Assembly (NCBI RefSeq): GCF_036365525.1
Contig: NC_090404.1
Span: 6,944,001 to 7,008,000, forward strand
DNA length: 64,000 nt
Direction: 5' to 3'
DNA from: Heterodontus francisci
Taxonomy: Eukaryota
Under the pieces are notes generated by a model that saw nothing but the letters and a program-made list of their open reading frames with translations, did not search any database and had not been told where the DNA came from. Positions within the stretch are counted from its first letter, which is position 1; every line of letters begins with the position of its first letter. The position numbers were made by a program, and so were the translations under genes. Below, one piece after another: positions 9,022 to 62,869 of the stretch.

Positions 9022-9069
9022 CTGCAGTCACAGTCACCATGGTCCCTTGTCCCCAGTAGTCCATTGCGT
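9022..9069 (-). other. IGHJ: JH segment, cluster A (AMDYWGQGTMVTVTA)
   Basis: WGQG motif, GTAAG donor, 23-RSS directly upstream. Confidence 0.97.
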
Positions 9070-9108
9070 CACAGTGTTACATTCCCTGGGCTGGGTCACA
9101 CAATAACT
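9070..9108 (+). other. J 23-bp-spacer RSS, cluster A
   Basis: CACAGTG (9070-9076) + 23 nt + ACAATAACT (9100-9108). Confidence 0.95.
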
Positions 9109-9434: not shown

Positions 9435-9503
9435 AGTTTTTGTATTGACAGTAACTGCTGTGCCACCCAGTATATCACAGTGAACCACATTGTGTAAAAT
9501 ACT
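9435..9503 (-). other. IGHD: D2 segment (ATATACTGGGTGG, 9463-9475) with 12/12 RSS, cluster A
   Basis: 3' RSS CACAGCA-12-ACAAAAACT (9435-9462). 5' RSS CACAGTG-12-TAAAATACT (9476-9503, degenerate nonamer). Confidence 0.93.
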
Positions 9504-9816: not shown

Positions 9817-9897
9817 GGTTTTTGTATGAGGAATTCGCTCTGTACAGCACCGTGACCCACTGCTGTACCCACAGTGACACGAACCTGCACAAATACT
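9817..9897 (-). other. IGHD: D1 segment (GGTACAGCAGTGGGT, 9855-9869) with 12/22 RSS, cluster A
   Basis: 5' RSS CACAGTG-12-ACAAATACT (9870-9897). 3' RSS CACGGTG-22-ACAAAAACC (9817-9854). Confidence 0.95.
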
Positions 9898-10281: not shown

Positions 10282-10320
10282 TGTTATTGTACGGGTCCTG
10301 CCCTGGTTCTTCTCATTGTG
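10282..10320 (-). other. V 23-bp-spacer RSS, cluster A
   Basis: CACAATG + 23 nt + ACAATAACA immediately after ...TGTGCCAGAGAT. Confidence 0.93.
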
Positions 10321-10625
10321 ATCTCTGGCACAGTAATAAATGGCGGTGTCTTCGGTCTTCAGTTTCTTCATGTCCAAAGCGAAGATGTTTTTTGAAGTGT
10401 CTTTGGACGCAGTAAATCGATCTTTAATCTCTGGGGCGTAAGCATTGTTAGATGAACTATAGTAGCTAACCAGCCACTCCAGCCCCTGTCCGGGAACCTG
10501 TCGGATCCAGTACATCCTGTAGCTGCTAAGAGTGAACCCGCTGGTTTTACAGGTCAGTCTCAGGGAGCCTCCTGGTTTCCCGGTCTCTGCCTCTGACTGA
10601 GTCAACACGACATCCGAATGGACAC
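10321..10625 (-). CDS. IGHV: VH exon, cluster A (unrearranged, open frame)
   Basis: tttttacag acceptor; [49 protein letters not shown]...[11 protein letters not shown]. Confidence 0.97.
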
Positions 10626-10731
10626 CTGTAAAAAATATTTAAAAACCCGAGGATTAACCCTGGTGAAATTATTCCTGACTCTGTAACATTCCAGAGAGAG
10701 ACTAACACTGAGACGGTAACAGTCTACTCAC

Positions 10732-10777
10732 GGGATAAGAAAACCAGCAACAGACTGAGAGAAATCGCCGACCTCAT
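10732..10777 (-). CDS. IGHV: VH leader exon, cluster A (MRSAISLSLLLVFLS)
   Basis: 46-nt phase-1 exon with GTGAG donor; splices in frame to the V exon ([10 protein letters not shown]). Confidence 0.95.
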
Positions 10778-12559: not shown

Positions 12560-12687
12560 NNNNNNNNNNNNNNNNNNNNNNNNNNNNNNNNNNNNNNNNN
12601 NNNNNNNNNNNNNNNNNNNNNNNNNNNNNNNNNNNNNNNNNNNNNNNNNNNNNNNNNNNNNNNNNNNNNNNNNNNNNNNNNNNNNNN
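12560..12687. other. Assembly gap (128 N)
   Basis: Run of N. Both flanks are collinear with the paralogous region ~53030-53107. Confidence 0.99.
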
Positions 12688-22705: not shown

Positions 22706-23569
22706 GGCCATGTCTCTATGAGATGAAAAAACATTATTATCAATAATGATGTTGGATTGGAAATTGGTCTCGGGTGACAGCCCAACACAGTCGTTATGGG
22801 TTTGGCCACCCGTTCCACGCAGCGCCTGATACTTAGTTTCACGACAGTCAACGGAATTAAATATCAGGTGCTGCCTACACCGGGCAGTCAATCCGATACT
22901 GTCCTTTCTGTGCCACTGACTGGGACCAATTCCTACCTCATATATTTGTCTGTGTGGGAGAGTGCAATCCTTTTCTGTCTGAATGAATATGTTTATTCTT
23001 GTTAATAGGAATCAGCAGCTATGTGCAATTGCGAATTGCTCCAGTATTATGTGGGTAATATTTGTGTTAAAAGGATAGGATGAGTCTTGCACCGATTTCC
23101 CAGAAATGTACTGGCGTTGAAGGACAGGACTAAAGGTGAACATAGTGCACTGCACTTCACACGACACAGTGACAAACTCTGTTGTCTTGAAGTTTGCTAA
23201 TTCACTCTTGTGTTGTACTGTGAAAATGCTCAGTTTTTAATGTTCAGGATTTTTTGGCCCTGCAGGATTTTCAATTTAGCTTTCACCTGACCGAGTGATT
23301 ATGTCAGAAACAGCTTGGAACAGTGATCTCGCAGTACCGGCTGATGGGCTGCCGCAGAGTCCTAATGCCCACGAGAAATTTCTCACCTGATCAATAGCAA
23401 AAGTGAAATGGGAATACACAATGTGTTATATACACGAGTGTGTGTGTGTGCAAAATAAATCATCCTTAATTACAAGACCGTTCCACAAAGACATGTGCGT
23501 ATTTCACAGGACTTTTTCTGCATTTTATTTTCTTTTATTCAAACTGTAATTGCAGATTGCTTAATACCG

Positions 23570-25385: not shown

Positions 25386-26709
25386 TTTTGCAGTCCCCGG
25401 GTTACACAGGGGCTGGATCTGACAGTTCATAGAAACCAATGTTTAAATCTTCTTTTTAGGGAATTTTATGTCTGAAAAAAGTCAAACTTCAAACCTCGCC
25501 AGAGGAACATTCAGAGTGTCACAAAGTTAAGTGAGCTGTTCGATTAATCCTATTTCCCATAACACGGCCAATTTGTCCACCTTCATGTATTGAGACAATT
25601 CCCTTTGAAAGTTACTGTTCAATCTGCTTCCAGCGGCCTTTCAGGCTGTGCATTCCAGATCACAACAAATCGCTGTATTAAAACAAAATTCTCCTCATCT
25701 CCCCCTCTGGTTGTGTTGCCAAATATCTCAAATATTTGTGTCCTCTGGTTACAACCCCTCCTGCTATTGGAAACAGTTTCTCCCTATCTACTCCATCAAA
25801 AATCCTTCCGGATTTTGCACACTTCTATCAAATCTTGTCTGCTCGAAGAGGACAACCCATGTTTCCCTTTATAAAATCTATCAAAAACCGCTCATTTTTG
25901 AACATATCGATTAAATAGGAAGACACACAGATGAAGAGGGAGACAAGCGAATGAGAGACAGAAAGACTCCAAGAAAATCTGAGAGACTTAAAAAAAGGCA
26001 GAAACACGAGGTGGTGAGAGATAAAAAGCTGAGTAATAGAGGGAACAAAGAACACACAGAGAGAATTATATAAAATGAAAGGGAGAAAACGACTAGCTCC
26101 CGGTTTCAGAGAGCAGAGAGAGCTCAGTGACTGATCCACAGATACTGCCAGTTATGTCCTGGAATGGAGAATCAAATCAGAAACAACAGGTTACTTTGTA
26201 AATGTCACCACAATGTGTTCTGTGTGACTTTGAACCGATTCTGTGGACAGATATAGGCCACCTTTGCAGATGTTTCCATCAGATTGTGGCCCCTGGATTT
26301 ATTTTCTGCTCAAAAGTGAGATGTGTGGTTTGGAACCGGCAGCAGTGAAACAGGAAGTTGTGTTGCTCGAGAATGAAACAGCAGCTGTCAGTTTCATGCT
26401 ATCACCATGAACAATTTTCCTGCCTGTGAGGGTGGATTCACTCTGATAGCACCAAGAACCAGCACAAAGATTTCTTCTGGACTCAGCATTGCATTCACCT
26501 CTATTCACATTTTAAAAAATAATCATATGAGTTCATTTGGGTTTTTATGAAGGGGGAGATGGAGTCAGGATGATCACTGGGAGAAATGAGGGGAGATTAA
26601 TAAAATGCATTTTCCCCAAAGAGAATTATTCGAAAATAGGAGATTTTAAGTGAGTCAACGTCTGTCTGTACAAGCGAGAGAGAGAGAGAGGAGACAGATC
26701 TAATGCGTG

Positions 26710-27320
26710 CAGTGCAGTCTGAGGGAGAGGAGAGAGGTTCACTGAGTACAGTCTGAGAGAGAGGAGAGAGATTCAGTGAGTTCAGTCTGAGAGAGAGGAG
26801 AGAGGATCAGTGATTTCAGTCTGAGAGAGAAGAGAGGTTCACCGAGTTCAGTCTGAGAGAGAGGGAATAGGTACAGTGAGTTCAGTCTGAGGGAGAGGAG
26901 AGAAATTCAGTGAGTTCAGTCGGAGAGAGGAGAGAGGTTCAGTGAGTTCAGTCTGAAAGAGAGGACAGAGGTTCAGTCTGAGAGAGAGGAGAGAGGTTCA
27001 GTGAGTTCAGACTGAGAGAGAGGAGAGAGGTGCATTGAGTTCAGTCTGAGAGAGAGGAAAGATGTTCACTGACTGAGTTCAGTCTGAGAGAGAGAGAGGT
27101 TCAGTGAGTTCAGTCTGAAAGAGAGGACAGAGGTTCAGTGAGTTCAGTCTGAGAGAGAGAAGAGAGGTTCAGTGAGTTCAGTCTGAGAGAGAGGAGAGAG
27201 GTTCAGTGAGTTCAATCTGTGAGAGTGGAGAGAGGTTCAGTGAGTTCAGTCTGAGAGAGAGAAGAGAGGTTCATTGAGTTCGGTGCAGCTTGAGAATAGG
27301 ACAGAGGTTCAGTGAGTTCG
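26710..27320 (+). repeat. 34-bp minisatellite (GTTCAGTGAGTTCAGTCTGAGAGAGAGGAGAGAG)
   Basis: Unit starts at 27133, 27167 and 27201 give a period of 34. Confidence 0.92.
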
Positions 27321-27564
27321 GTGACAGATGTTCTCGCCTGGGTAACGGAATGGTCTGTGTGAGATGTCTTTCTCACACAAGAGCACGCAACAGAATGGGT
27401 TGTGAAAAATTGTTCTTGTTATCAGATGATTGGCAATGTTATTGCATTTTGAATAAAGCGAAATTGAATAAAATACTGAAAGACACTCGGTTGACATAAT
27501 CACTTATGCCGGTGCAAATGCATTGGAAGAATTAAGAATTATGTGTTCGAGGCAAACTGACTAT

Positions 27565-28364: not shown

Positions 28365-31300
28365 AAGAACATAAGAAATAGGAGCAGGAGTAGGCCATTC
28401 GGCCCCACGAACCTGCTCCACTATTCAATAAGATCAGGGCTGATGTGATCATGGCCTTAACTCCACTTTTCTGCCTGCCCCCTTAACCATTGACTTTCTT
28501 ATAGCTAAAAATGTGTCTCAATCACCTTTGAGTGTATACAATTTTTTTTTTTTTTTTTTTAGAGATACAGCACTGAAACAGGCCCTTCGGCCCACCGAGT
28601 CTGTGCCGAACATCAACCACCCATTTATACTAATCCTACACTAATCCTATATTCCTACCAAACATCCCCACCTATCCCTATATTTCCCTACCACCTACCT
28701 ATACTAGTGACAATTTATATTGGCCAATTTACCTATCAACCTGCAAGTCTTTTGGCTTGTGGGAGGAAACCGGAGCACCCGGAGAAAACCCACGCAGACA
28801 CAGGGAGAACTTGCAAACTCCACACAGGCAGTACCCGGAATCGAACCCAGGTCCCTGGAGCTGTGAGGCTGCAGTGCTAACCACTGCGCCACTGTGCCGC
28901 CCACAATGATCCAGTCTCCACTGCTTTCTGAGGAAGAGACATCAAACACTAACAACCCTCTGAGAGAAGAAATTCCACTTCACTCCGTCTTAAATGGAAG
29001 ACCCCTTATTTTGAAACTGTGCCCCCTAGATCCAGATTTCTCCATGAAGGGAAACGTTCTCTCTGCATCTACCCTTTCAAACCCCCTCAGAATCTTATAT
29101 GCTTCAACAAGATCATCTCTTATACTTCTAAACTCCAATGAGTAAAGGCCCAACCTTCTCAACCTTTCCTCATAAGCCAACCCTTTCATCCCAGGAATCA
29201 GCCGCATGAAACCACGCTGAACTACTTCCAATGCAAGTACATCCCTCCTTAAGCAAGGAGACTAAAACTGTATGCAGTACTCTAGGTGCAGTCTCTCCAT
29301 ACCCTGTAAAGTTGCAGCAATACTTCCCTACTTTCATATGCCATCCTCCTTGCAATACGCACCAACATTCTATTTACCTTCCTTATTTCTTGCATGCTAA
29401 CTTTTTGTGATTCATGTACGAAGATACTCAGATCTCTCTGTACCACAGCATTCTGCAGCCTCTCTCCATGTAAACAATATTCTGCTTTTCTATTCTTCCT
29501 GCCAACGTGGACAACCACACATTTTTCCACATTATTCTCCATCTGCCAAATTTTTGTCCACTCTTTTAACCGACCTATATCTCTTTGCAGATAGATTGTG
29601 TCCTCCTTCCAACTTGCTTTTCTATGCATTTTCATATTGCCCACAAATTTAGCTACGATATACCCGGCCCCTTCATCCAAGTCATTGATATAGATTGTAA
29701 ATAGTTGAGGCCCCAGCACTAATCCCTGTGACACTCCGGTTTGCCAACCTGAGAATACTCCATTTATCCCGACTCTCTGTTTCCTGTTAGTTAGCCAATC
29801 CTCTATGCATCGAAACAGAGAAAATAGGAGTAGGGGAAGGCAATTCGGCCCTTCGTGCCTGCGCCACCATTCATTATGATCATGGCTGATCATCCAACTC
29901 AGTAACCTGTTCCTACCTTCGCCCCATATCCTTTGATCCTTTTAAACCGAAGAGCTATATCTTCTTGAAAACATCCAATGTTTTGGCCTCAACTGCTTTC
30001 TATGGTAGCGAATTCCACAGGTTCACCACTCTCTGGGTGAAGAAATTTCTCCTCATCTCAGTCCTGAATGGTTTACCCCATATCCTTAGACTATGACTCC
30101 TGGTTCTGGACTCCCACACCATCGGGAACATCCTGCCTGCAACTACTCTCTCGAGTCCTGTTAGAATTTTATAGGTTTCTATGAGATCCCCCTCACTCTT
30201 CTGAACTCCAGGGGATAAAATCATAACTGACTCAATCTCTCCTCATACGTCAGTCCCGCCATCCCAGGAATCAGTCTGGTAAACCTTCGCTGCACTCGCT
30301 CTATAGCAAGAACATCCTTCCTCAGATAAGGAGACCAAAGATGCACACAATATTCCAGGTGTGGCCTCACCAAGGCCCGGTATAATTGCAGCAAGACATC
30401 CCTACTCCAGTTCTCGAATCCTCTCGCTGTGAAGGCGAAAGTGGGAACAGTTTACTGAGTTGGATGATCAGTCATGATAATAATTAATGGTGGAGCAGCC
30501 GCGAAGGGCCGAATGGCCTTCTCCTGCTCCGATTTTCTCTGTTTCTCTTTGCCTTTTTTACCGCCTGTTGGACCTCCATGCTTACATTCAGCGACTGGTG
30601 TACGAGAATACCCAGGTCTCGTTGTGTATTCCCCTCTCTCAGTTTATCGCCATTCAGATAATATATTACCCCCAACACCAAGAGCTCTTATCTTGTCTAA
30701 AAAATTTTATGTGGCACCTCATCGAACGCCTTTTGGAAATCCAATGCGTGGTCTCTACTAGTTTCCTTTTATCCACCCTGCTTGTTACATCCTCAAAGAA
30801 CTGTAAAACATTTGTCAAACACAATTTCCCTTTCATAAACCATGTTGACTCTGCCTGATTGAATTACAGAGTCACAGATTCATAACGGCGAAGAAGGAAG
30901 CCAATCAACCCACCGAATCCGTTCTGGCTCTATTTAGAGCAATGCAATCAGTCCTGTCCATCAGCTCTATCCCTGTCGCCCTGAAAATTTACTTCCCTCA
31001 AGTGCCCATCCAATTTATCATTGAAATCATTCATCATCTCTGCATCCAGCATTCTCTTAGGCAGTAACTTCCAGGGCATTACCGCGCAATGTGTAAAGCA
31101 GTTCTTCTTCACATCCCCCTGTATTTCTTGCTCAAAACCTGAAATCTGTGCCCACTAGTCCTTGTACCATCATGTAATGGGAACAGCTTTTCTTGTCTAC
31201 TCCATTCATACCTGTCACACACTTCCACACTTCTGTCAAAATTACCCTCAATCTTTTTTGCTCCAATGAGAACAACCTCAGCTTCTCCAACCTAAACTTG

Positions 31301-31919: not shown

Positions 31920-33180
31920 CAGCCATGAATATGTAGCACCTAGTGTAATATAAGAAGAGATGGGATGGAGTCCACTCTTGACTGAGACAGGGATGTATGT
32001 AATATTACATGAGACTAGGCCTTGTGCAGTAATGACGTAGACAATGCCGAGTGTAAAATAAACAGAGATGTGGTCGAGTGCAGGAATAATCTAAACATGT
32101 TCTCATGTGATATAAACTAGGACTGGGGATGGCCTCGTGGAATATGAAAAGAAGCATGGCCATGTCAATCAGAAGTGAGCGAGGGCTGAATGTAATATAA
32201 GCAGAGACATGGTCTGGAGCAATATGAGCAGTAATGGTCGGTTTTATGGTAAACAGAAACACTGGCTACTGCAGCAATAACTGAGACAGGGCCAAGTGAA
32301 GCTAATAGAGCTACAGGACCTGGAATACGATAAACTAAGACAGGGTCTAGTGAAGCTAATAGAGCTACAGGACCTGGAAAACAATAAACTGAGAAAGGGT
32401 CTAGTGTACTCACTAATGATACTGGGTCCAGATTCATATAAACTGAGACAGGGCCTAGGATACAGGGCCTTGATTAATATAAACTGAGACAGGATCCAGC
32501 GCAGAAATTACTGATTCAGTCATTATATTAGTATGAAGTTTGACAGAGCCTAGTGCATTGATTACAGATACAGGGTCTAGATTAAAAGAAACTGATTCAG
32601 GTTCCATTGGGACATAAATAGAGATAGAGTACAGTACAATATAAACAGAAACGGGGTCCAGTTAAATATAAATAGAGACGGGATCCAGTGTAATATCAAC
32701 AGAAGACAGGCTCTAGTAAAATATATTAACAGAGATGGAATCTATTTATATATATATATATCAACAGAGACAGGGTCAAGTTTGATAAAAACAGAGACGA
32801 GGCCAGTATAATATAAACAGAGACGGGGTCTATTGTAGTATAAAGAGAGACAGGGTCTAGTTTAATAAAACAGAGATGGGTTCTATTTTAATATAAACAG
32901 AGACGGGGTCTAGTTCAATGTAAACAGAGACAGGGTCTAGTATAATATAAACAGAGATGGGTTCTATTTTAATCTAAACAGAGACAGGGTCTATTGAAAT
33001 ATAAAGGGAGACAGGGTCTAGTTTAATTAAAAACAGAGACGGGGCCAGTGTGATATAAATGGAGACAGGGTCTACAGACATATAAACAGAGACAGGGTCT
33101 ATTGTAATATAAAGAGAGACAGGGTCCAGTTTAATAAAACAGAGACGGGGCCAGTGTAATTTAAACAGAGACAGGGTCCA
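31920..33180 (-). repeat. 27-bp satellite array, reverse orientation
   Basis: GTAATATAAACAGAGACAGGGTCTAGT units. Confidence 0.88.
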
Positions 33181-33739: not shown

Positions 33740-36150
33740 TAAAAGCAAAATAATGCGGATGCTTGAAATCGGAAATAAAAACATGAAATGCTGGAACAAC
33801 TCAGCAGGTCTGGCAGCATCTGTGAAAAGAGAAGCAGAGTTAACGTTTCGGGTCAGTGACCCTTCTTCGGAACTGATATATAGAATATTAGAAAAGTCAC
33901 AGGTGATAAGCAAGTGAGGTGGGGGTGGGGCAAGAGATAACAAAGGAGAAGGTGTAGATTGGACCAGGACACATAGCTGACCAAAAGGTCATGGAGCAAA
34001 GGGAAACAATGCAAATGGTGTGTTGAAAGACAAAGCATTAGTACAGATTAGGTGTTAATGCACTGAATATTGAACAGCAGCAAGTGCAAACCTGAAAATA
34101 AAACAGTGGGTAAGTAAAATGAACAAACTAAGATGAAATTAAATAAATGCAAAAAAAAGAATGTAAAAAATGTAAAAAAGAATGTTAAAAAAAAGAGAAG
34201 AAAATATAACTAAAAAAGAAAGTAAAATGGGAGGCTGTCATGGTCTGAAATTATTGAAGTCAATGTTCAGTCCGGCAGGCTGTAGTGTGCCTAATCGGTA
34301 GATGAGATGCTGTTCCACGAGCTTGTGTTGATGCTCACTGGAACACTGCAGCAATCCCAGGACAGAGATGTGAGCATGAGAGCAGGGGGGAGTGTTGAAA
34401 TGGCAAACAACCGGAAGCTCAGGGTCCTGCTTGCGGACTGAGTGGAGATATTCCGCAAAGCGGTCACCCAGTCTGCGCTTAGTCCCCCCAATGTAAAGGA
34501 GAGCATACTGTGAGCAGCGAATACAGTATACTACATTGAAAGAAGTACAAGTAAATCGTTTCTTCACCTGGAAGGAGTGTTTGGAGCCTGGGATAGTGAG
34601 CAGAGAGGAGGTAAATGGGCAGGTATTTACCTCCTGTGATTGCAGGGGAAGGTGCCATGGGACGGGGACGAGGTGCTGGGGGTAATGGAGGAGTGGACCA
34701 GGGTGTCGTGGAGGGAATGATCCCTTCGGAATGCTGACAGGGGAAGGGAGGGGAAGATGCGACAGATAGTGGCATCACGCTGGAGGTGGCAGAAATGGCG
34801 GAGGATGATCCTTTGGACATGGAGGCTGATGGGTGGAAAGTAAGGACAAGGGGAACCCTGTCACGGTTCTGGGAGGGAGGGGAAGGGGTGAGTGTAGAGG
34901 TGTGGGGAATGGGCCGAACACCGTTGAGGGCCTTGTCAACCTTAGTGGGGGGAAATCCTCGGTTGAAAGAAAAGGAGGTCATATCAGAAGCACCGTCATA
35001 GAAGAGCAGATGCGTCGGAGACGGAGAAACTGGGAGAATGGAATGGAGCCCTTCCAGGAGGTAGGGTGTGAAGAAGTGTCGTCGAGGTAGCTGTGGGAGT
35101 CGGTGAGCTTATAACGGATATTAGTAGGCAACCTATCCCCAGAGATGGAGACAGAGAAGTCGAGGAAGGGAAGGGAAGTGTCAGAGATGGACCATGTAAA
35201 GGTGAGAGAAGGGTGGAAATTGGAAGCAAAGTTGATACAGTTTCCCAGTTCGGGGCGGGAGCAGGAAACGGCACCGATAGTCATCAATGTACCGGAAAAA
35301 GAGTTGGGGGAGGGGGCCTGAGTAGGACTGGAACAAAGAATGCTCGACATATCCCACAAAAAGACAGGCATAACTAGGACCCGTGCGGGTACCCATAGCG
35401 ACGCCTTTTACTTGAAGGAAGTGCGTGGAGTTGAAGGAGAAGTTGTTCAATGTGAGAACAAGTTCAGCCAGGTGGAGGAGGGTGGTGGTGGATGGGGACT
35501 GGTTGGGCCTCTGTTCCAGGAAGAAGCGGAGAGCCCTCAAACCATCCTGGTGGGGGATAGAGGTGTAGAGCGATTGGACGTCCATAGTGAAGAGGAGGCG
35601 GTTGGGACCAGGAAACTGGGAATTGTCAAAATGACATAGGACGTCAGAAGAGTCACGGATTTAGGTGGGAAGAGACTGGACCAGCGGAGAAAAGATAGAG
35701 TCTAGATAGGAAGAAATAAGTTCAGTGGGGCAGGAGCAGGCTGACACATTGGGTCTGCCGGGACAGTCCCGTTTGTGGATTTTGGGAAGGAGGTAGAAGC
35801 GGGCTGTCCAGGTTTGCGGGACTATGTGGTTGGAAGCTGTAGAGGGAAGATCTCCAGAGGAGATGAGGTCAGTGACAGTCCATTGGACGTTGGCCTGATG
35901 TTCGGTGGTGGGGTGATGGTCCAGAGGGAGGTAGGAAGAAGTGTCCATGAATTGGCGTTGAGCTTCTGCAAGGTAGAGGTCGGTACGCCATGCAACAAAA
36001 GCATCACCCTTGTCTGCAGGTTTGATGACCATGTCGGGGTTAGACCTGAGAGACCGGAGTGCCTCAAGTTCAGATGGGGACAGGGTAGAGTGAGTGAGGG
36101 GGGGGGCAGAGAAATTGAGATGACCAATGTCTCGCCGACAGTTTTCAATG
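33740..36150 (-). mobile_element. Penelope-like retroelement (RT + GIY-YIG), 5'-truncated and frameshifted
   Basis: VIKPADKG, MDVQSLYTSIPH, GVAMGT, RYIDD; FTCTSFNVVYCIRC...YIG.TKRRLGDRF (GIY-YIG); hammerhead-like motif near the 3' end. Confidence 0.92.
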
Positions 36151-39595: not shown

Positions 39596-41683
39596 TTACA
39601 GTCTCTTGAGGACTCGCTGGTGTGTTCGCAGGTGGGATGACTGAGTGAACCCCTTCCCACACACAAAGCAGGTGAATGGCCTCTCCCCAGTGTGAATTCG
39701 GTGGTGATTCAGTAGGTTGGATAAATGAGTGAATCCCTTCCCACACATGGAGCAGGTGAACGGCCTCTCCCGAGTGTGAATTCGTTGGTGTGTCAGCAGG
39801 TTGGATGACTGAGTGAATTTTGTATCACAGACGGAGCAGGTGAAGGGCCTCTCCCTGGTGTGAACTCGCTGTTGATTTAACAGGTTGGATGAACGCGTGA
39901 ATCCCTTCCCACAAATCGAGCAGGTAAATGGCCTCTCCTGAGTGTCAACCTGCTGGTGTGTCAAAAGATTGCATGAACGGGTGAATCCCTTCCCACACAC
40001 AGAGCTCATGAATGGTCTATGCCCCGTGTGAAGTTGCTGATGTATCAGAAGGCTGGATGAATTCATGAATCCCTTCACACACAGAGAGCAAGTGAAAGGT
40101 CTTTCCCCAGTGTGCGAATATTGGTGTGTCAGCAGATCCTTTTTCCTTTTAAAGCTCTTCTCACAGTCAGAACAATTAGAAAGTTCAGTGTTAGAGTGAA
40201 CAAGTTGATGTGTTCGAAGGTGGGATGATTGGGTGAATCCCTTACCACAAACAGAGCAGGTCAACAGTCTCTCCCCAGTGTCACTTCTTCGATGAGAATC
40301 CAGCTGGGATGGGTAATTGAATCCCTTCCCACAGTCCCTGCATTTCTACGGTTTCTCCATGGTGTGGGTGCCCTTCTCCCGCTCCAGGTTGGATGAGAAG
40401 TTGAAGCCTCGTCCACACACGTGTGCAGTTTCTCCCCGATGTGAATGGTGGAGTGGTTTCTCAGTCTGTGCAACTGGTTAAAGCTCTTTCCACAGTCAAT
40501 GCACTGGAACACTCTGACTCGGGTTTGTGTGTGTGAGTCGGTGCTTTTCCAGTCACACTGATGTTTGAAATCTTTTCCCACAGACAGAACAAACAAACAT
40601 TTCTCCTTCCACATTCAAAGGCCGATGACATTCAGACTAGATGAATTGAGTGACTGTCAGATCTTCACCTGAAGCTTGGCTTGAGTTTCCAGTCTGAAAA
40701 TAGTAGTATATATAAATGATTTGGAGGAAAATTTAGCTGGTCTGATTAGTAAGTTTGCGGACGACACAAAGGTTGGTGGAGTTGCAGATAATGATGAGGA
40801 TTGTCAGAGGATACCGCAGGATATAGATCGGTTGGAGACTTGGGCGGAGCTTTGGCAGATGGAGTTTAATCCGGACAAATGTGAGGTAATGCATTTTGGA
40901 AGGTCTAATGCAGGTGGGAGGTATACAGTAAATGGCAGAACCCTTAGGAGTATTGACAGGCAGAGAGATATGGGCGTACAGGTCCACGGGTCACTGAAAG
41001 TGGCAACGCAGGTGGATAAGGTAGTGAAGAAGGCATTTGGCATGCTTGCCTTCATCGGCCGGGGCACGGAGTATAAAAATTGGCAAGTCATGTTGCAGCT
41101 GTACAGAACCTTAGTTAGGCCACACTTAGAATATTGCGTGCAATTCTGGTCGCCACACTACCAGAAGGACGTGGAGGCTTTGGAGAGGGTACAGAGGAGT
41201 TTTACCAGGATGTTTCCAGGTCTGGAGGGCATTAGCTATGAGGAGAGGTTGGAAAAACTGGGATTGTTTTCACTGGAACGACGGAGGTGGAGGGGCGACA
41301 TGACAGAGGTTTACAAAGTTATGAGCGGCATGGACAGAGTGGATAGTCAGAAGCTTTTTCCCAGGGTGGAAGAGTCAGTTACTAGGGGACATAGGTTTAA
41401 GGTGAGAGGGGATGTGCGAGTCAAGTTCTTTACACAGAGTGTGGTGAGTGACTGGAACGTGTTGCCAGGGGAGGTGGTGGAAGCAGGTACCATAGAGACA
41501 TTTAAGAGGCATTTTGACAAATTCATGAATAGGATGGGAAGAGAGGGATATGGGCCCCGCAATTCCTGAAGGTGTTAGTTTCGGCAGGCATCAAGATCGG
41601 CGCAGGCTTGGAGGGCCGAATGGCCTGTTCCTGTGCTGTACTGTTCTTTGTTTTTTTTGTTCAAATGCTCCTCTTCTAATACC
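39596..41683 (-). pseudogene. Tandem C2H2 zinc-finger pseudogene; last exon split by a CR1 insertion
   Basis: About 8 fingers with TGERPF linkers in ORF 39596-40264 (three missing a zinc ligand), more fingers across frameshifts to ~40610, and a tttacag acceptor at 41684-41690. Confidence 0.88.
40702..41662 (+). mobile_element. Young CR1-type LINE 3' fragment (282-aa open RT C-terminus), AAAT TSD
   Basis: SKFADDTK...QMEFNPDKCEVMHFG...QFWSPHY; AAAT at 40698-40701 and 41663-41666. Confidence 0.93.
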
Positions 41684-47533: not shown

Positions 47534-48434
47534 CGGTGGAGTAGCAGATAGTGAAGGGGACTGTCAGAGAATACAGCAGAATATCGATAGACTGGAGAGT
47601 TGGGCAGAGAAATGGCAGATGGAGTTCAATCAGGGCAAATGCGAGGTGATGCATTTTGGAAGATCCAATTCAGGAATGAACTATGCAGTAAATGGAAAAG
47701 TCCTGGGGAAAATTGATGTACATAGAAATTTGTGTGTTCAGGTCCATTGTTCCCTGAAGGTGGCAACGCAGGTCAATAGAGTGGTCAAGAAGGCATATGG
47801 CATGCTTTCCTTCATCGGACGGGGTATTGAGTACAAGAGTTGGCAGGTCATGTTACAGTTGTATAAGACTTTGGTTCGGTCACATTTGGAATACTGCGTG
47901 CAGTTCTGGTCGCCACATTACCAAAAGGATGTGGATGCTTTGGAGAGGGTGCAGAGGAGGCTCACCAGGATGTTGCCTGGTATGGAGGGCGCTAGCTATG
48001 AAGAGAGGTTGAGTAGATTAGGATTATTTTCATTAGAAAGACGGAGGTTGAGGGGGGACCTGATTGAGGTGTACAAAACCATGAGAGGTATAGACAGGGT
48101 GGATAGCAAGAAGCTTTTTCCCAGAGTGGGGGATTCAATTACAAGGGAACACGAGTTCAAAGTGAAAGGGGAAAAGTTTAGGGGGGATATGCGTGGAAAG
48201 TTCTTTATGCAGAGGGTGGTGGGTGCATGGAACGCATTGCCAGTGGAGGTGGCAGACGCGGGCACGATAGCGTCTTTTAAGATGTATCTAGACAGATACA
48301 TGAATGGGCAGGAAGTAAAGAGATACAGAACCTTAGATAATAGGCGACAGGTTTAGATAGAGGATTTGGATCGGCGTAGGCTTGGAGGGCCGAAGGGCCT
48401 GTCCCTGTGCTGTAATTTTCTTTGTTCTTTGTTC
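47534..48434 (+). mobile_element. Young CR1-type LINE 3' fragment, specific to cluster B (245-aa open frame)
   Basis: (TTCTTTG)n tail; GTTC at both junctions; empty site in the paralog at ~16915. Confidence 0.92.
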
Positions 48435-52465: not shown

Positions 52466-54697
52466 TTTTTCAAAAATTCATGTAGGGCAGTGGAAAAATG
52501 TATCTACTCGTTTGCTACATGTCTGCTGTGGTTGAAGTAATTCGGGTGAGTGCTTTGTTGTTCGTGAAAGGACCACATGTTCAGAAATATTGCAATAGTC
52601 CTTTCTCAACCCAGTCATAGTATCCCTCTGAGACGAAAATTCGCCATCAGCAGAGAAGGAACATCTGCACCACAGGGATACCTAAGGTTTCTCTTTGCGA
52701 ATTCAGCTCGTTAATTCCGGATAACCTAGGAATTCAAAATGATCTAGAAAATCAGGAAGGACTGAAGGCGTCAGACTGATACAAATGACATAAAGGGGCC
52801 GGTTCAGGTTAGGAATAATAGATCAGAAAGATGAGACAGCATCTTCCAGGCCCATCTCTCCATCCATCCATTCATTCTCCCATCTATGAATCCATCCATC
52901 AATCAATCTGTTCATCGGTCCTTTAAACAAAACGTTCAGACCTCCAACTATCCATGCATTCCAGCATCGCTGCATCTGTCCCTCTATCCGTGCAAGTCAG
53001 TATATTTATCTATTTCAGAAGGCATCCTCTCTCTGATGCCCTCTCTGTCTGTATACGTGTTTGTCTGTCTATCTATCTATCTGCATATCTGTTGCAATGT
53101 TATGATGTGCTGACAGATCCTCCAGTGCACTGTTGCAACTGACAGGGTGTCTAGAGTTTGGATGTATTTCATTTCCTGAGAGATGGCAACAGTTCACAGA
53201 GTTTAACAACTGATAAAAAATTGACTGCAGTATTGTTGCTGGGTAGATTTGTTTATGAATTGGCCTCATTCACAATGTTAACAGTTTGAAGTTGGCTTGC
53301 AGCCAAGCGGTCAGTAATGAGGAAACGGATCTTTGATTTAATGCACAGAATATCCAGATGCTTCCTGTAAATAATATTGGGTATTCGAGGCTCCCTGACA
53401 GTAGTTAGCTGGGTTGCTGCCAAATACTGTGTGGAGCAGATTAGCGTGAATAGAATGGACAAAAATGGAATTTAAACATTTAAACATTAACTTAATCAGC
53501 AGCGCTCTTTAAAAAAATGCATTTTACATGATATCACATCTAAAGAATGATCTTAGGTAAATGCAGTGCTCACATCACGATATAATGGGAGCTCAACATA
53601 ATAAATTGACCCAAATGTCAATTAAATATGATTCTAGATAATTAAGAACATTTATTTCGTACTGCATGAAGTCCTAGAGAGAGATTTTAATAACCCCACA
53701 TTGATATAAGTGGGACTAGCATAATAAATAAATAGATAGAATTGCCTTGAATCCGCTGCATTTCCTTGACTTTTCTCACAGAGGTGCGAATACATTCAAA
53801 CTAAAGACTCCTTTATTACTGATAACAGCTGCATAACGTACAGTTTACTTTCTGATGATTTCGATTGTCAAACTAGCCTTCTCGTAGCCAGGCAACTATT
53901 GGATAGAGAAATGCCCTGTTTGTGATCCGTTTCCACAGTAAATATTCTTGTGATATTCTGTAGCATAGCGTTGAGTCTTGATAACTGCGTTTCGGATACA
54001 AAAATATGTTGCACAGTCTGTCGCTCTTACAGTTATCTGCAATGATTTGGGTGCAGGGGGATAGATTTGCTGATCGACCTATCGGTTCTGATTCACTAGT
54101 TCCTGTTTTTCAAAAGCTGATCTGAATTTTACATGTCACTCCTTCATTATCAGGCAAGTCAACTTATTTTACAGGTAATTTTCAAATGGCTGGCTTAGGG
54201 TCATAGAATCAAAAGCAATTCTAGAAATACACAGAGAGAGAGAAAGACTTGTGTAATGTGAAGTGTTTCTATTCACTGTGGTCTTTTGTAGTGTAACTGC
54301 AGTCATTCACGCTGCAAATCGAATCACTTCTCTAATATCCCGCATTTTCTGCATAAAATTATTTAAAAAGAAAACATTATCGGGGATACTTTATTGCTAT
54401 AGATCGAAGGGTTGGATAGCAAGAGACAGAGCAACGAGCAGTCACTTTTGACGCCATTAATATAATTCAATCTGAAGCTTTGACATCCTTAGTGTAGTCT
54501 TGACGAAATAAAAGGGTTTAATTCACAGGCCACAATGCAATTATTTATTACTGAACGCATTCTCAACTGCAATATTTCCATTTAGTAACAAGTAACAGTT
54601 TGCATTCAAACCATACAGCCAAATACCTATCCCAAGAAAGAGATAAAACGTTCACATTTAATAATAACCCAGTCTAATGATATGAATCCATTCTTTT

Positions 54698-54795
54698 GGT
54701 GATGTGAAAAGTGGGACGTGGATACAGTCAAGGCCTCGGTCAGGGAATCGATAGGCGGCGCCTGGAACCTCGCCCCCTTCTGCCGGGTATTTAAA
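54698..54795 (+). promoter_or_regulatory. VH promoter, cluster B (TATTTAAA at 54788-54795)
   Basis: Mirror homolog of the cluster A promoter. Confidence 0.65.
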
Positions 54796-54886
54796 TGCCA
54801 TTCACTATCACTGCAATACAACAGTCCTGGAGCCAGTTTGCTCAGTGAGTTCTTGGCAGAACCATTTTCACCGAATTGCCAGAAGG

Positions 54887-54932
54887 ATGAGCTCGGCGAT
54901 TTCTCTCAGTCTGTTACTGGTTTTCTTATCCC
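54887..54932 (+). pseudogene. IGHV: VH leader exon, cluster B (MSSAISLSLLLVFLS)
   Basis: 46 nt with GTGAG donor. The exon itself is intact but belongs to a pseudogene cluster. Confidence 0.93.
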
Positions 54933-55059
54933 GTGAGTAAGTTTTATTGTCCGTTTCTCTCACTGTTACTGTCTCAGTGTTAGTCTCTCTCTGGAATGTT
55001 ACAGAGTCAGGAATTCTTTCACCAGGATTAATCCTCAGGGTTTTTGATATTTTTTACAG

Positions 55060-55390
55060 GTGTCCATTCGGATGTCGTGTTGACTCAGCCAGAGGCAGAG
55101 ACCGGGAAACCTGGAGGCTCCCTGAGACTGACCTGTAAAACTAGTGGATTCAATCTTGGCAACACCCGGATGTACTGGATATGACAGGTTCCCGGGCAGG
55201 GGCTGGAGTGGTTGGTTCACTACGATGCTTCATCCAGCAATAGTTACGCCCCAGAGATTAAGGATCGATTTACTGCGTCCAAAGACACTTCAAATAATAT
55301 CTTCGCTTTGGCCATGAAGAACCTGAAGACCGAAGGCACCGCCATCTATTACTGTGCAAGAAACATTACTACATTGGGTACACTGAGTGG
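55060..55390 (+). pseudogene. IGHV: Germline-joined V-D1-D2 exon, cluster B; in-frame stop at 55182-55184
   Basis: [43 protein letters not shown]...[10 protein letters not shown] runs directly into D1-like and D2-like sequence. No V RSS and no intersegment DNA are present. Confidence 0.95.
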
Positions 55391-55418
55391 CACAGCAGTT
55401 ACTGTCAATACAAAAACT
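55391..55418 (+). other. D2 3' 12-RSS, cluster B
   Basis: CACAGCA-GTTACTGTCAAT-ACAAAAACT, identical to the cluster A D2 3' RSS. Confidence 0.95.
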
Positions 55419-55723
55419 CCCTCAGCGCTAATTGAAGAGTCTGGGTCAGTGCTTGCTTTTACAATCCAACTATACATACAGTGAATTTCTATTTGTGTCC
55501 AGCACTGTCCTACTAGACGGTTTATTATGGATAAACTGATGAATTATTCATTCATCAGTTGGTGATTTCAATAATTGCTGATATGTTGCTGAGTGAAATA
55601 TAAAACATCAGGATAATGTACCAACAGTGAAAAGAATCATTAGCGCAGTTAGAATTTACAATTTTAATCTGGGATGTGGATGTTTAAAATAATGAGGGCT
55701 TTATCTCCATTCTGTGCAGAGCC

Positions 55724-55810
55724 AGTTATTGTGTCACCCTGCCCAGGGAATGTAACACTGTGACACCATGGACTACTGGGGACAAGGGACCATGGTGACG
55801 GTGACTGCAG
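55724..55810 (+). other. IGHJ: JH segment (55763-55810, TMDYWGQGTMVTVTA) with upstream 23-RSS, cluster B
   Basis: AGTTATTGT-23-CACTGTG, WGQG motif, GTAAG donor. Confidence 0.96.
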
Positions 55811-58800
55811 GTAAGGAGAAAGCTCTAAAAAAAAGCTCTCATTCAGTAACTGTTTTGTTTGTGTTTTATTTTATATTTCTGTCTATTTTAATGATGCATT
55901 GGTTCACTGAAATGTGGATTCGGTGGATTCTGTATTGAGATCTGTTGCAATGTTTTCTGTGATTCTGCTGCAAAGGGATGAAAGATTTTAATGGCTTCTC
56001 CAAATCGGTGTTGTTGAGGGTTTCAGTTCCTGATTGATGTGATTTGGTGTACATTTGCTGATGTGACTGTGTGTTTGGGCGACTTTAAATATCTAGTTGC
56101 TGTTAAACCTTATGACGTTTCTACATTGTTTAATCTCGATGACATCTAGCTGCTGCAGGTTTTCCGAACGAACACAAACAATAAGTTTGAAATATGTTTC
56201 AAATAAGTTTATAGGCTGAAAGTTTTAGAGGTCAAAAATAGCCTTACTATATTTTCATCTTTTACTGTTTGTGGTAATTTAAAAATTTTCATCTATCAAT
56301 CTACTGCTCACGAATGCTCATATGTGACACAATACATTTTGATGTAATTAAGTACTGCATAAATCACAAGTTTGCTGCTTTAGTCAGATTTACATGAATA
56401 TAACCTCATTTATTATAATGCAGTGATATGAGCCAATATCAATTAAAATGCTATAGCATCAATATTAATTTATGAAACATGTTCTTTGTACCAGTAATTC
56501 TGCTGCCATTGTTTTATATATCTCGTAATTCAGCGGCAGGCGGACTCGGCGGATTCTGCATTGAGATTTTTTTTTTTGCAGTTTTGTATTTGATTCTGCT
56601 GCAAGTGTTTGTGGAATTAAGCTGCTTCTCCATGAAAAGTACTGAGGCGGGATTCAGCCCCTCAGTGATGTGAGTTGGGTTTTACCTGCTGAGGAGAGTG
56701 TGTGTCTGTGTTCCAAAGGAAAATTTGTGAAGCTGGCGTTTCTGCTTTGTGACATTGAGCGGCTGTCGGATTTCTAATCGAATGGAGACATTTTACCTGT
56801 TCAAAACGAAAGGCAATTTTGTCAGGAAAACTGCCAGGTTTCAGAAATGAAAAAAAAACGCTTTAAGATTTTTCAAGGCATTTTTTAACTTTAATAACAG
56901 GTTTATCTATTAAACCATGGTTTGCGACGCTCTTTCAGTACGTGAAATGTTATTGCAAATACAAACTGCATACGCAGCAAGTTTGCAGATTGGAGAGTGA
57001 AATGAATGCAATTCAAATAATTATAATGCGACAATATCTCCACATATAAACCAAATATGCTTTAATATTAACATCGATTCATTATTCATTAAACTACTTT
57101 TACAATTCTGGCGTGCCACGCACATAATTACCATGACCAGAGCATTTTATGGGCTGGAGACAATTTTTAATTTATGCTTGAAATGATTGCAATAAGAGTG
57201 TACTTATTCCAGTGCTCTGTTCAGTTTGATGAGCGGTTTAGAATTAATTGTTATATTCCTGATTAAAACAGAGGAATGGCAGCTTGTATTTACTCATAAC
57301 TTAAATAGGAGTTGTAAATTGCAGTGTGTCTGTGCAATATATCTGTCTGGTTATTACATTCTTTGCGTGCAGCCCAAACTATGTTCTTCCTTAAATGTCA
57401 TTTGTTGTTGCATAGCGCGATAATTATCACTGATCTAATATTAACCATTTTCCTGAGACAAGAAGTCGCTGGCAGTCAACGAATTGTTCACATGATTTTA
57501 TTTAAATTGAAGAAACTTGCAGACTGCATCAGGCTAGAGCCAAACAAATAACACGTTGATGTTCAAGCAGATTCAATTAATTACACAAGGTTAATGTTAT
57601 TTTTGAATTCAATAACAGCATCTTGTCTCTTACAGCTGTCCGGCTCACAGGATAGAATTATAGGCAAAGGATAGTGTATACATGACAGTTATGCCTAATT
57701 GTTATTAAATATTAAATTGGTCAACAAAATCTCGGCTACATTTGAACATTAAATTTCAAATGTCGCAGATGATCTGAAGAATTGTTTTCGTCTATTTTAC
57801 AGTGATCGTTTTGGAGCTTCCTTCAACAAAAAAGCACAATATATTTAACAATTAATGTACAGGTATTGTCTGAACCACGGGAGTAAAATATAAAAACATT
57901 GTGTCATTAAATAGTGGCAGCACCGTCACTGATCGCAAACTGCCCAGATGTTTTTGATTTTTTTCTCATATGGTTAAGATTTATGACAATATTTAAACAC
58001 GAGAGTCCTGCTTTCACAAACAGGCGATATTACAGCCCATGGACAGTTAGTGAGATGTGACCCTGGACAGGCTTGAAACTATTTAAAATATTCCACTCTT
58101 AAATCCATCGTGTGAAATACACGCTGAGAATTGACGGAGTTTATGATATATCAACACATTCAGATACGTGTGCAGTTGCAAGGTTGTAGATAGAAAGCAG
58201 GGCGGGACTAAATTTATTGTTCATTTTAAATTATGGAACTATGATTCGAATTAAGTAAAAGTAATATATTTGTCTGAATAGTTTCATCTATTAATATGAA
58301 GTTTATTATTTAATATTGATTAAGGGTCATAATAATTTAATTAAAACCCCAATATTTCACAAGGTGCCAGGCAGAAACTGGTCTTGAATTAATATTAACT
58401 CATGTTTACAAACATAGTATTAAATCAGCTAACATGAAAATTAACCAAGAATATAATAATGCTGATTCATTAAACATAAATGACCTCCCACAATTGAATA
58501 GCATAATTGCCAAGAATCCAATGAGTGCAAAATCTCAAGGGCCGGAGAGAATTGTGAATTACATCTGAAAGTAATTTAGAGAACAATACATTTCTTACTT
58601 AGCTGTTCTCGGCTCGATAAGGTGTCACCACAGATTTTAATGAATTAACTTTGTGCATTGCTTCAAATCTTTTTGGTAACATTTAATTCTGAAATTGTAT
58701 CAAACCAGTGGATAATCGGTTTGCAAGTTAAACGTCTCTTGATTTTCTAAATTCTTTCTCTGTCACTGAGTTCCTGTTGCAGACATCAAATTTCCCTGAA

Positions 58801-61723: not shown

Positions 61724-62020
61724 CGACACCGTCTCCCCCAACCCTTTACGGCCTATGCTCCTGTGCACAAGCCAACACCGGTGGCTCCGTGGCCTACGGC
61801 TGTTTGGCGATGGACTACATCCCCCAAATCACCAGCGTTTCCTGAAAGAAAGATAAAGAGCCGATCACCACTGGATTGAAGATTTACCCATCAGTGCTGA
61901 ACAAGAAGGGAACCTACACCTTGAGCAGCCAGTTAACAATCACCGAGTCAGAGGTGGGAAGCCGCAAAATCTACTTCGAGATTCGATGCAGAGAGTCGCT
62001 TTGGATCAAGGAAATTCCAG
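61724..62020 (+). pseudogene. IGHM: IgM CH1 exon, cluster B, inactivated
   Basis: Conserved Trp TGG>TGA at 61843-61845; second Ig Cys TGC>TTC at 61975-61977; splice sites intact. Confidence 0.94.
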
Positions 62021-62232
62021 GTTAGTGTTGTGGAAACTGTGGAAAAACATAAAAGCTATAGTGATCTTGTGTAGAGCTTTGGCTTTACGACATTTAGGGT
62101 ATTGTGCACTGTTCTGATGCCAGGAAACTCCAGTTAGTATCTGCGTGACAACAAATAACCTGTTAAAATAAAAGAACAGTTTGGATAAGTTATTAATGTC
62201 TTCGATAAATATCTAACATGTTTTTCTTCAAG

Positions 62233-62550
62233 ATTGCAAAGGTGACATCGTCCATCCAACTGTTATCCTCACCCAGAGTTCCAGCGAAGAAATCACAAGC
62301 AGCAGATTTGCAACTGTCTTGTGTTCAATCATCGATTTCCAGCCAGAGTCAATAACCGTGAGTTGGTTGAAGGATGGACAACCCACGGATTCGGGCTTCG
62401 CCACCTCTCCCGCCTGTGAAGTGAACGGGAACTTCTCGGCGACCAGTCGGCTGACAGTCCCGGCTGTGGGATGGTTCACCAACACGGTCTATACCTGCCA
62501 CGTCTCCCATCAAGAGGTCACCCAAAGCCGAAACATCACCGGATCTCAGG
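62233..62550 (+). pseudogene. IGHM: IgM CH2 exon, cluster B (frame open)
   Basis: [21 protein letters not shown]...[21 protein letters not shown]...[21 protein letters not shown]; AG acceptor and GTAAG donor. Confidence 0.93.
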
Positions 62551-62869
62551 GTAAGAGACACAAACCGAGAAAACTCCAGATCATTCTGTTCTCTGATGAA
62601 TAACAAATTGAACAATTTATTGGAGTTAGTACAAAGCACTGAATATTTTTCCAATTCGCCATCGTGCCTCATTCCGCTGTGAGTGCTGAATTAGAATTGC
62701 TCACGGTTCAACATGTCATCACATCACCAAAGAATGGCTCCCTCTGCTTTGATGTCAAATAGTGAGTCAGGTGGCCTTGCTTTCAGTTTTATCGTGATTT
62801 GACCGATCATATTCAGAGCGGCAATAGGTGTCTGGAACTCTTTACTGTTCACAACCTCGGGATCAAGTG

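What the first reader, a model, noticed from the sequence alone, without database searches (positions are those of the whole stretch)
55353..55418. Germline-joined VDD-J cluster with a readable RAG junction, beside an unrearranged sister copy
Seen: TGTGCAAGA|AACAT|TACTACATTGGGT|ACACTGAGTGG|CACAGCA-12-ACAAAAACT. The middle block matches cluster A D1 (10/13) and the last block matches D2 (9/11). All four internal RSSs and ~830 bp of intersegment DNA are cleanly gone. The D1 3' end is untrimmed and followed by AC, its palindromic complement (possible P nucleotides). Between 2 and 5 nt at the V-D1 join have no template in cluster A (possible N nucleotides). Established: germline-joined VD-J and VDJ clusters are known in horn shark and skate and are attributed to RAG activity in germ cells. 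Inference: the adjacent split paralog lets this junction be parsed, and N bases would imply TdT acted as well. V-D-D joined without D-J, the reverse of the mammalian order.
Basis: partly seen in the sequence, partly recalled or inferred. Interest (0 to 1): 0.8.

Follow-up and report, generated by a model that had tools for sequence, protein, structure and literature searches.

The report
Dead half-joined shark IgM gene cluster
A horn-shark-type antibody heavy-chain gene has its V, D1 and D2 pieces already fused in the assembled chromosome; this is real, but the layout has been known in this shark since 1988, this copy is a dead gene, and its junction cannot be read as proof of added bases.

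Summary
At 55353-55418 a shark IgM-type V exon runs straight into 29 nt that carry D1-like and D2-like cores. A 12-spacer RSS follows, then 305 bp of spacer, a 23-spacer RSS and J. The split sister cluster (minus strand, 9.0-10.8 kb) has all six RSSs, so cluster B lacks exactly 830 bp and four RSSs.

Excision exactly at the RSS borders fits RAG-type joining in the germ line. That is the known explanation for the VD-J, VDD and VDJ joined genes of horn shark (Kokubu 1988; Lee 2000).

- **P/N reading not supported.** The sister cluster is only 81-89% identical in non-coding DNA, so it is not the parent. The junction (29 nt) is 2 nt shorter than the untrimmed V-tail+D1+D2 template (31 nt). The "AC" fits equally well as D2's own 5' bases.
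There is an in-frame TGA in FR2 of V, an in-frame TGA in Cmu1, and the second disulfide Cys of Cmu1 is lost.
- **VDD-J before D-J is not unusual.** Sharks join these segments in no strict order (Malecek 2008).

The scan already noted another VD(D)-J cluster about 910 kb away in this genome. Verdict: real, already known, low interest.

The parts
54887..54932 (+). Cluster B leader exon (ATG at 54887)
   Evidence: Aligns 44/46 with the cluster A leader. RNA contigs of paralogues splice 54932->55060, GT..AG.
54933..55059 (+). Cluster B leader intron (has a 21-bp insertion relative to A)
55060..55361 (+). Cluster B V exon up to ...TACTGTGCAAGA; FR3 motif EDTA changed to EGTA
   Evidence: Translation. 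It is 89.4% identical to the V of A. The part after the stop is 83% identical in protein to HV01_HETFR.
55182..55184 (+). In-frame TGA in FR2 (WI*QVP). Cluster A has CGA (Arg) here, so this is a CpG C>T change.
   Evidence: Short-read contigs of the same sample cover this bin at single-copy depth with no other letter reported.
55362..55390 (+). V-D1-D2 junction, 29 nt: AACAT / D1-like TACTACATTGGGT / D2-like ACACTGAGTGG
   Evidence: It is 20/29 identical to the untrimmed A template GAT+D1+D2 (31 nt).
55391..55418 (+). Retained D2 3' RSS: CACAGCA-12-ACAAAAACT
   Evidence: 28/28 identical to the D2 3' RSS of cluster A.
55419..55723 (+). Unrearranged D2-J intersegment
   Evidence: 88.6% identical to that of A.
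55724..55762 (+). J RSS: AGTTATTGT-23-CACTGTG
   Evidence: 37/39 identical to A.
55763..55810 (+). J segment (…DYWGQGTMVTVTA), followed by a GT donor
61724..62021 (+). Cluster B Cmu1 exon, disabled: in-frame TGA at 61843-61845 (conserved Trp) and TGC>TTC at 61975-61977 (second disulfide Cys to Phe)
62238..62558 (+). Cluster B Cmu2 exon; open in the window
   Evidence: Pfam C1-set, E 1.8e-17.
10321..10777 (-). Cluster A leader, intron and intact V exon (split sister cluster)
10282..10320 (-). Cluster A V RSS: CACAATG-23-ACAATAACA
9817..9897 (-). Cluster A D1 (9855-9869, GGTACAGCAGTGGGT) with a 5' 12-RSS and a 3' 22-RSS
9435..9503 (-). Cluster A D2 (9463-9475, ATATACTGGGTGG) with 5' and 3' 12-RSSs
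9022..9108 (-). Cluster A J RSS (23) and J segment
169..466 (-). Cluster A Cmu1 exon, intact
   Evidence: Pfam C1-set.

Best explanation
Cluster B is a partially germline-joined (VDD-J) IgM-type heavy-chain cluster of a horn-shark-type genome, and it is now a pseudogene. Inferred mechanism: in a germ-line cell of an ancestor, the V(D)J recombinase cut a split V-D1-D2-J cluster at the V 23-RSS and D1 5' 12-RSS, and at the D1 3' 22/23-RSS and D2 5' 12-RSS. It removed both intersegment pieces (about 830 bp) and joined the coding ends with little net change in length. D2-J was left open with its 12/23 RSS pair.

The cluster has since collected disabling mutations in V and Cmu1, or was already decaying when it joined. 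The junction therefore differs from the conserved D cores through an unknown mix of end processing and later substitution.

Shown here: the anatomy, the exact loss of the RSSs, the lesions, and the divergence from cluster A. Inferred: RAG as the agent, germ-line timing, and the order of joining and gene death.
For: - The sequence and alignment show V fused to D1-like and D2-like cores. The 830 bp and four RSSs of the split paralogue are absent, and the flanks are colinear.
- Only two RSSs remain, and they form a legal 12/23 pair.
- The D1 core match is non-random, p about 0.004-0.007.
- Lesions: V TGA at 55182; Cmu1 TGA at 61843; Cmu1 Cys>Phe at 61975.
- Short-read DNA contigs of the assembly's own sample cover 29 of 30 bins at about 22x single-copy depth. 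They show no joint, and only 3 contigs lie partly on the stretch, none at the V-D border.
- Literature: cartilaginous-fish clusters partly (VD-J, VD-DJ) or fully (VDJ) joined in the germline are attributed to RAG in germ cells. [quoted passage not shown]
- The nearest named protein is the Heterodontus francisci VH HV01_HETFR, 83% identical.
Against: - Germ-line status is not proven. The only DNA run that holds the locus comes from the assembly's own individual and its tissue is unknown. Logan contigs break at paralogue branch points, so the lack of a split-form contig is weak evidence.
- The one run from another individual that I laid (X21) gave 7 uninformative reads.
- Nothing at the junction is specific to RAG beyond the exact RSS borders. 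No unambiguous P nucleotides are present.
- The primary paper (Kokubu 1988) is not held, so I rely on how later papers describe it.
Confidence: 0.86

Rival explanations
1. The join is somatic. On this view a lymphocyte VDD-J intermediate from lymphoid or blood DNA was built into the assembly, and the germ line carries the split form.
For: VDD-J is a frequent somatic intermediate in nurse shark thymocytes and occurs in B cells. The same individual gave RNA rich in IgM (X5, X7), so lymphoid tissue was sampled from it.
Against: - A single lymphocyte clone is a tiny share of any tissue and would not become the assembled path.
- Short-read contigs show single-copy depth with no competing split-form contig or loose end at 55361/55391.
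- The junction has nearly germline length, unlike the N-rich somatic junctions seen in the RNA.
- Germline joined clusters are documented for this species group.
Confidence: 0.04
2. Two RAG-independent deletions (end-joining or replication slippage) happened to remove the V-D1 and D1-D2 spacers in a decaying pseudogene.
For: The cluster is dead and free to decay. The junction bases differ from the D cores at 9 of 29 positions.
Against: Two independent deletions would each have to begin and end within a few nt of RSS heptamers, remove all four RSSs, and keep both D cores in order and a total length within 2 nt of the untrimmed template. That is very improbable by chance.
Confidence: 0.04
3. Real N (and perhaps P) nucleotides are preserved at the V-D1 border, so TdT acted together with RAG in the germ cell.
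For: AACAT matches the A template GATGG at only 1 of 5 positions, the worst stretch of the junction. Somatic junctions in this animal are rich in added bases (table 5c).
Against: - Cluster A is 11-19% diverged in non-coding DNA and is not the parent.
- The junction is 2 nt shorter than the untrimmed template, not longer.
- The cluster is a pseudogene that has taken substitutions elsewhere, including in conserved codons.
- The AC is explained by the D2 5' bases with one mismatch.
- Lee 2000 already noted that H-chain junctions are too varied to dissect.
Confidence: 0.15
4. The fused V-D-D is an archaic arrangement that was never split.
For: This was once debated for shark joined genes (Discussion of Lee 2000).
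Against: - B sits inside the same VH family as split cluster A. The flanks, leader intron, D2-J spacer and J-C intron are colinear at 81-92% identity.
- B contains both D cores in order.
- Lee 2000 showed that joined genes derive from split ones.
Confidence: 0.01

Closest known systems
Horn shark (Heterodontus francisci) partially joined VH clusters (VD-J / VDD joined), Kokubu et al. 1988 EMBO J 7:3413, as cited by Lee et al. 2000 and later reviews
   Same: The same species group and the same VH family: the leader and framework are 83% identical to HV01_HETFR. V is fused to D-derived sequence without RSSs, and J is still split behind a 12/23 RSS pair.
   Different: I could not read the 1988 paper, so I cannot say whether this particular cluster was among the clones. 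Here the cluster is placed on a chromosome, 44 kb head-to-head from a split cluster, and is shown to be dead in both V and Cmu1.
Nurse shark germline-joined NS4 light-chain genes (Lee, Fitch, Flajnik, Hsu 2000, PMC2193156)
   Same: Joined genes sit beside split paralogues. The RSSs are fully excised and the joints are compared with split coding ends to infer RAG-type processing. Some copies are pseudogenes.
   Different: There the joined and split genes are up to 99% identical, which is what made P-region inference possible. Here the only split copy available is 81-89% identical, too far for that inference. That work concerns a light-chain VJ, not a heavy-chain VDD.
Somatic VDD-J (2R) intermediates in nurse shark lymphocytes (Malecek et al. 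2008, PMC2435157)
   Same: The same configuration, made by the same two joins, showing that V-D1 and D1-D2 can precede D2-J in sharks.
   Different: Those are clone-specific, found in thymus, spleen or blood DNA, and have diverse N-rich junctions. This one is the assembled chromosomal form at single-copy depth.
Nurse shark IgM1gj and other fully joined VDJ clusters
   Same: A germline product of the same process in IgM-type clusters.
   Different: Those are fully joined, in frame and expressed in neonates. This one is only partly joined and cannot encode a chain.

Membership tests
Cartilaginous-fish IgM-type heavy-chain cluster | Leader, split leader intron, VH exon, J and Cmu exons in one short unit | tested here: met
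   Leader 54887, V 55060-55361, J 55763-55810, Cmu1 61724-62021, Cmu2 62238-62558. All are colinear with cluster A. Best named hit is HV01_HETFR.
Partially germline-joined (VD-J / VDD-J) cluster | V coding end fused to D-derived sequence with no RSS between them | tested here: met
   29-nt junction with D1 (10/13) and D2 (9/11 or 10/12) cores. No true RSS lies between 55361 and 55391; the scan's only other hit there is a weak overlapping by-product.
Partially germline-joined (VD-J / VDD-J) cluster | J still separate, with a legal 12/23 RSS pair | tested here: met
   CACAGCA-12-ACAAAAACT at 55391-55418 and AGTTATTGT-23-CACTGTG at 55724-55762.
Partially germline-joined (VD-J / VDD-J) cluster | The joined form is inherited: present in non-lymphoid or germ-cell DNA and in other individuals | tested here: inconclusive
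   Contigs from the same individual agree with the assembly at single-copy depth and show no split form. The tissue is unknown. The run from another individual (X21) did not cover the junction.
RAG-mediated germline recombination product | Deletion endpoints coincide with the heptamer borders of a split relative, and all internal RSSs are removed | tested here: met
   830 bp and four RSSs of A are absent. Junction length is within 2 nt of the untrimmed coding ends.
RAG-mediated germline recombination product | P nucleotides (hairpin footprint) at a coding joint | tested here: inconclusive
   AC after ...GGGT could be a P addition, but it aligns equally well as D2 5' bases. Four parses score equally.
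TdT involvement | Bases at the joint that no germline coding end can template | tested here: inconclusive
   AACAT is untemplated by A, but A is 11-19% diverged. The other split clusters of the genome could not be searched with these tools.
Functional Ig heavy-chain gene | Open V and C reading frames with the conserved Cys and Trp | tested here: not met
   V TGA at 55182-55184; Cmu1 TGA at 61843-61845; Cmu1 Cys>Phe at 61975-61977.

The most novel reading that the evidence does not exclude
The 4-5 bases at the V-D1 border (AACAT) are true non-templated additions preserved in inherited DNA. If so, TdT as well as RAG was active in a shark germ cell. A genome-wide comparison of joined and split IgH clusters in this assembly could then settle the heavy-chain junction question that Lee et al. 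2000 left open.
Probability: 0.15. Interest if true: 0.45.

Novelty: already known. Interest (0 to 1): 0.15.

Why it matters
Germline-joined shark Ig genes are the classic evidence that the V(D)J recombinase can act in germ cells and reshape the genome. This locus is one more example, in the species where the phenomenon was first found, and it is a dead copy. On its own it teaches little. Its modest value is as a mapped, fully sequenced case: the joined and split clusters lie head-to-head 44 kb apart on one chromosome piece. It could enter a genome-wide census of joined and split clusters. With much closer parent-offspring pairs, that census could show whether heavy-chain germline joints carry P or N bases.

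Tried and rejected
1. **P-nucleotide reading of AC.** Rejected as undecidable. Global alignment of the junction to GAT+D1+D2 gives four equal-scoring parses with a 2-nt gap and no insertion.
2. **A remnant of the D2 5' heptamer in the junction** (CACTGAG against CACTGTG). This needs an internal 10-nt deletion of D2, and the ungapped D2 match (10/12) is simpler. The "CACTGAG-22-nonamer" hit is a by-product that overlaps the real 12-RSS.
3. **Inverted D use.** Reverse complements of D1 and D2 score lower than the forward matches.
4. **Expression of cluster B.** The RNA runs X5 and X7 show huge numbers of V-to-J junction contigs, but at 95% likeness these come from paralogues. Contigs crossing 55183 carry the paralogues' TGGGTCCGACAG rather than the TGA, and the few D2-J spacer contigs have 3 mismatches in 75 nt. 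I found no B-specific transcript, but the output lists only the best-supported records.
5. **Another individual.** Targeted-capture run X21 gave only 7 partial reads.
6. **The primary 1988 paper.** Not held by PMC id or DOI. Only the abstracts and reference lists of the 1993 and 1995 J Exp Med papers are held.
7. **The closest split parent.** No tool here searches this genome beyond the window. The scan's notes give no D or V-tail sequences.
8. **A long identical run across the D2 3' RSS as a sign of conversion.** About 40 nt are identical between A and B. A run of about 35 nt is expected anyway at 88% identity over this length, so I make nothing of it.

The N run at 12560-12687 was left as it is.

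Full report
**What is there**

The window holds two IgM-type heavy-chain clusters of a cartilaginous fish. Cluster B lies on the + strand. Its parts are:

| Part | Coordinates | Note |
|---|---|---|
| Leader exon | 54887-54932 | |
| Leader intron | 54933-55059 | |
| V exon | 55060-55361 | ends ...TACTGTGCAAGA |
| Junction | 55362-55390 | 29 nt, AACATTACTACATTGGGTACACTGAGTGG |
| D2 3' RSS | 55391-55418 | CACAGCA-12-ACAAAAACT |
| D2-J spacer | 55419-55723 | 305 bp |
| J RSS | 55724-55762 | AGTTATTGT-23-CACTGTG |
| J segment | 55763-55810 | followed by a GT donor |

Cluster A lies on the minus strand and has the full split layout:

| Part | Coordinates | Note |
|---|---|---|
| V | 10777-10321 | tail ...GCCAGAGAT |
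| V RSS | 10320-10282 | 23-nt spacer |
| D1 | 9869-9855 | GGTACAGCAGTGGGT, between a 12-RSS and a 22-RSS |
| D2 | 9475-9463 | ATATACTGGGTGG, between two 12-RSSs |
| J RSS | 9108-9070 | 23-nt spacer |
| J | 9069-9022 | |
| Cmu1 | 466-169 | |

The two clusters are head-to-head and 44 kb apart. Between them lie tandem repeats, reverse-transcriptase fragments and a C2H2 zinc-finger ORF.

**Check of the observation**

- The pairwise alignment is colinear from the 5' flank to the end of V, and again from the last bases of D2 onward.
- Relative to A, cluster B lacks 845 bp minus the 15 nt of D1, that is 830 bp, together with four RSSs.
- An RSS scan of all 64 kb finds only the RSSs of A plus two in B, apart from one weak overlapping by-product inside the B junction.
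- The D1 match is reached by 0.4% of shuffles of the 18-nt interval and by 0.7% of random sequences.

- In the V reading frame, FR2 reads W-I-stop-Q-V-P. The TGA at 55182-55184 sits where cluster A has CGA, so this is a CpG transition.
- The conserved FR3 motif EDTA has become EGTA.
- The J-C intron of B is colinear with that of A, which places Cmu1 of B at 61724-62021.
- Cmu1 of B has an in-frame TGA at 61843-61845 in place of the conserved Trp.
- Cmu1 of B also has TGC>TTC at 61975-61977, which removes the second disulfide Cys.
- Cmu2 (62238-62558) is open in the window and is a C1-set domain.
- A note of this scan (s1-872600) reports further lesions downstream, beyond my window. I did not test those.
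- Cluster A is open in V and Cmu1 and keeps all its RSSs.

**Can the junction be parsed?**

Cluster A is not a close relative of B. Identity between them is:

| Region | Identity |
|---|---|
| 5' flank | 84.8% |
| Leader intron | 91.5% |
| V exon | 89.4% |
| D2-J spacer | 88.6% |
| First 1 kb of J-C intron | 80.7% |

Against the untrimmed A template (V tail GAT + D1 + D2 = 31 nt), the 29-nt junction aligns with one 2-nt gap and 20/29 identities. Four placements of the gap at the D1/D2 border score the same.

- **The "AC".** The best D2 match is in fact 10/12 (TACACTGAGTGG against TATACTGGGTGG), sharing the T with the end of D1. No P bases are needed.
- **The V-D1 border.** This is the one poorly matching stretch: AACAT against GATGG, 1/5. 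It could hold N bases. It could equally reflect a parental V tail or D1 5' end that differed from A. It could also reflect substitutions after joining, in a gene that has visibly decayed.
- **Junction length.** The junction is slightly shorter than the germline coding ends laid end to end. The somatic junctions in this animal's RNA instead hold 11 to 34 varied letters between V and J (table 5c).

Lee et al. 2000 made the same point. [quoted passage not shown] Their P-region inference for light chains relied on joined and split genes up to 99% identical.

**Germ line or somatic?**

I laid four runs on 54400-56400.

- **X1 (DNA, probably the assembly's own sample).** It covers 29 of 30 bins and the unique flanks sit at about 22x. 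No joints were reported. Only three contigs lie partly on the stretch, at 55517, 55771 and 55776, and none leaves the sequence at the V-D or D2-RSS borders. No other letter was reported at the V TGA.
- **Weight of this evidence.** It agrees with the assembly and argues against a mixture with a split allele. It is not proof. The tissue is unknown, and de Bruijn contigs stop at paralogue branch points.
- **X21 (another individual).** It gave 7 uninformative reads.
- **X5 and X7 (RNA).** They hold very many V-to-J contigs from paralogous, somatically rearranged clusters. I saw none specific to B.

A somatic VDD-J clone, frequent as a class in nurse shark thymocytes, would be far too rare individually to become the assembled path. 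I put the somatic or artefact reading at about 4%.

**Mechanism**

Excision exactly at the heptamer borders, loss of all four internal RSSs, both D cores retained in order, and a legal 12/23 pair left at D2-J together form the footprint expected of two V(D)J-type joins. The published explanation for such clusters is RAG activity in germ cells. This step is inferred, not shown. The order of joining and gene death is unknown.

**Comparison with what is known**

- The best named protein match of the V region is the Heterodontus francisci VH HV01_HETFR. It is 83% identical to both A and B, with a nearly identical leader.
- Other agents' notes call the genome horn shark.
- Reviews state that shark IgH clusters may be partly (VD-J, VD-DJ) or fully (VDJ) joined in the germline, citing Kokubu 1988.
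[quoted passage not shown] The "reverse of the mammalian order" is therefore expected in sharks.
- This scan has already noted another VD(D)-J IgM cluster about 910 kb away (s1-873876, judged ordinary) and several fully joined VDJ clusters in the same genome. I did not check those.

**Verdict**

This is a real, correctly described junction of an already known kind, in the species where the kind was discovered, and in a dead copy. The added claims (a readable junction, P and N bases, TdT) are not supported by the one split copy available. They remain testable with a genome-wide census of clusters. Interest is low.

Noticed in passing
window 61724-62021: Cmu1 of cluster B has an in-frame TGA (61843-61845, replacing the conserved Trp) and TGC>TTC (61975-61977, loss of the second disulfide Cys). 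The constant region of the joined cluster is therefore dead as well as its V.
   Followed up: yes
window 55771 and 55776 (loose ends of DNA contigs of run X1): Two 255-nt DNA contigs of the same individual run into this J from other sequence. One reads ...CACTGTG ATATCCTGGGT ATTTC then J, which is a D2 with its 5' heptamer joined directly to J. They look like other clusters of this genome with D-J or VDJ already joined.
   Followed up: no
window 39596-40614, minus strand: ORFs encoding at least six tandem C2H2 zinc fingers (Pfam zf-C2H2, E 3e-43) lie in the spacer between the two IgM clusters. The 84-bp direct-repeat family at 39607-40446 is the finger array.
   Followed up: partly
window 29282-29893 (-), 35181-35585 (-), 40721-41569 (+), 47619-48356 (+): Retroelement debris fills the 44-kb spacer. 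Two ORFs have weak RVT_1 matches, below the Pfam cut-off. Two mutually similar ORFs of 245-282 aa have no Pfam match; they belong to direct-repeat families D5-D8, which also hit 5222-5774 in the J-C intron of cluster A.
   Followed up: partly
window 21388-22717, 32546-33172, 26677-27334: There are long arrays of 27-bp and 34-bp tandem repeats between the clusters. Their nature is unknown.
   Followed up: no
window 54400-56400, RNA runs X5 and X7: RNA of the same individual holds hundreds of different V-to-J junction contigs with D1 (GGTACAGCAGTGG) and D2 (ATATACTGG[A/G]TGG) cores and many added bases. This is a ready sample of the somatic CDR3 repertoire of this VH family.
   Followed up: no
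window 12560-12687: A run of 128 N (assembly gap or mask). I left it untouched.
   Followed up: no
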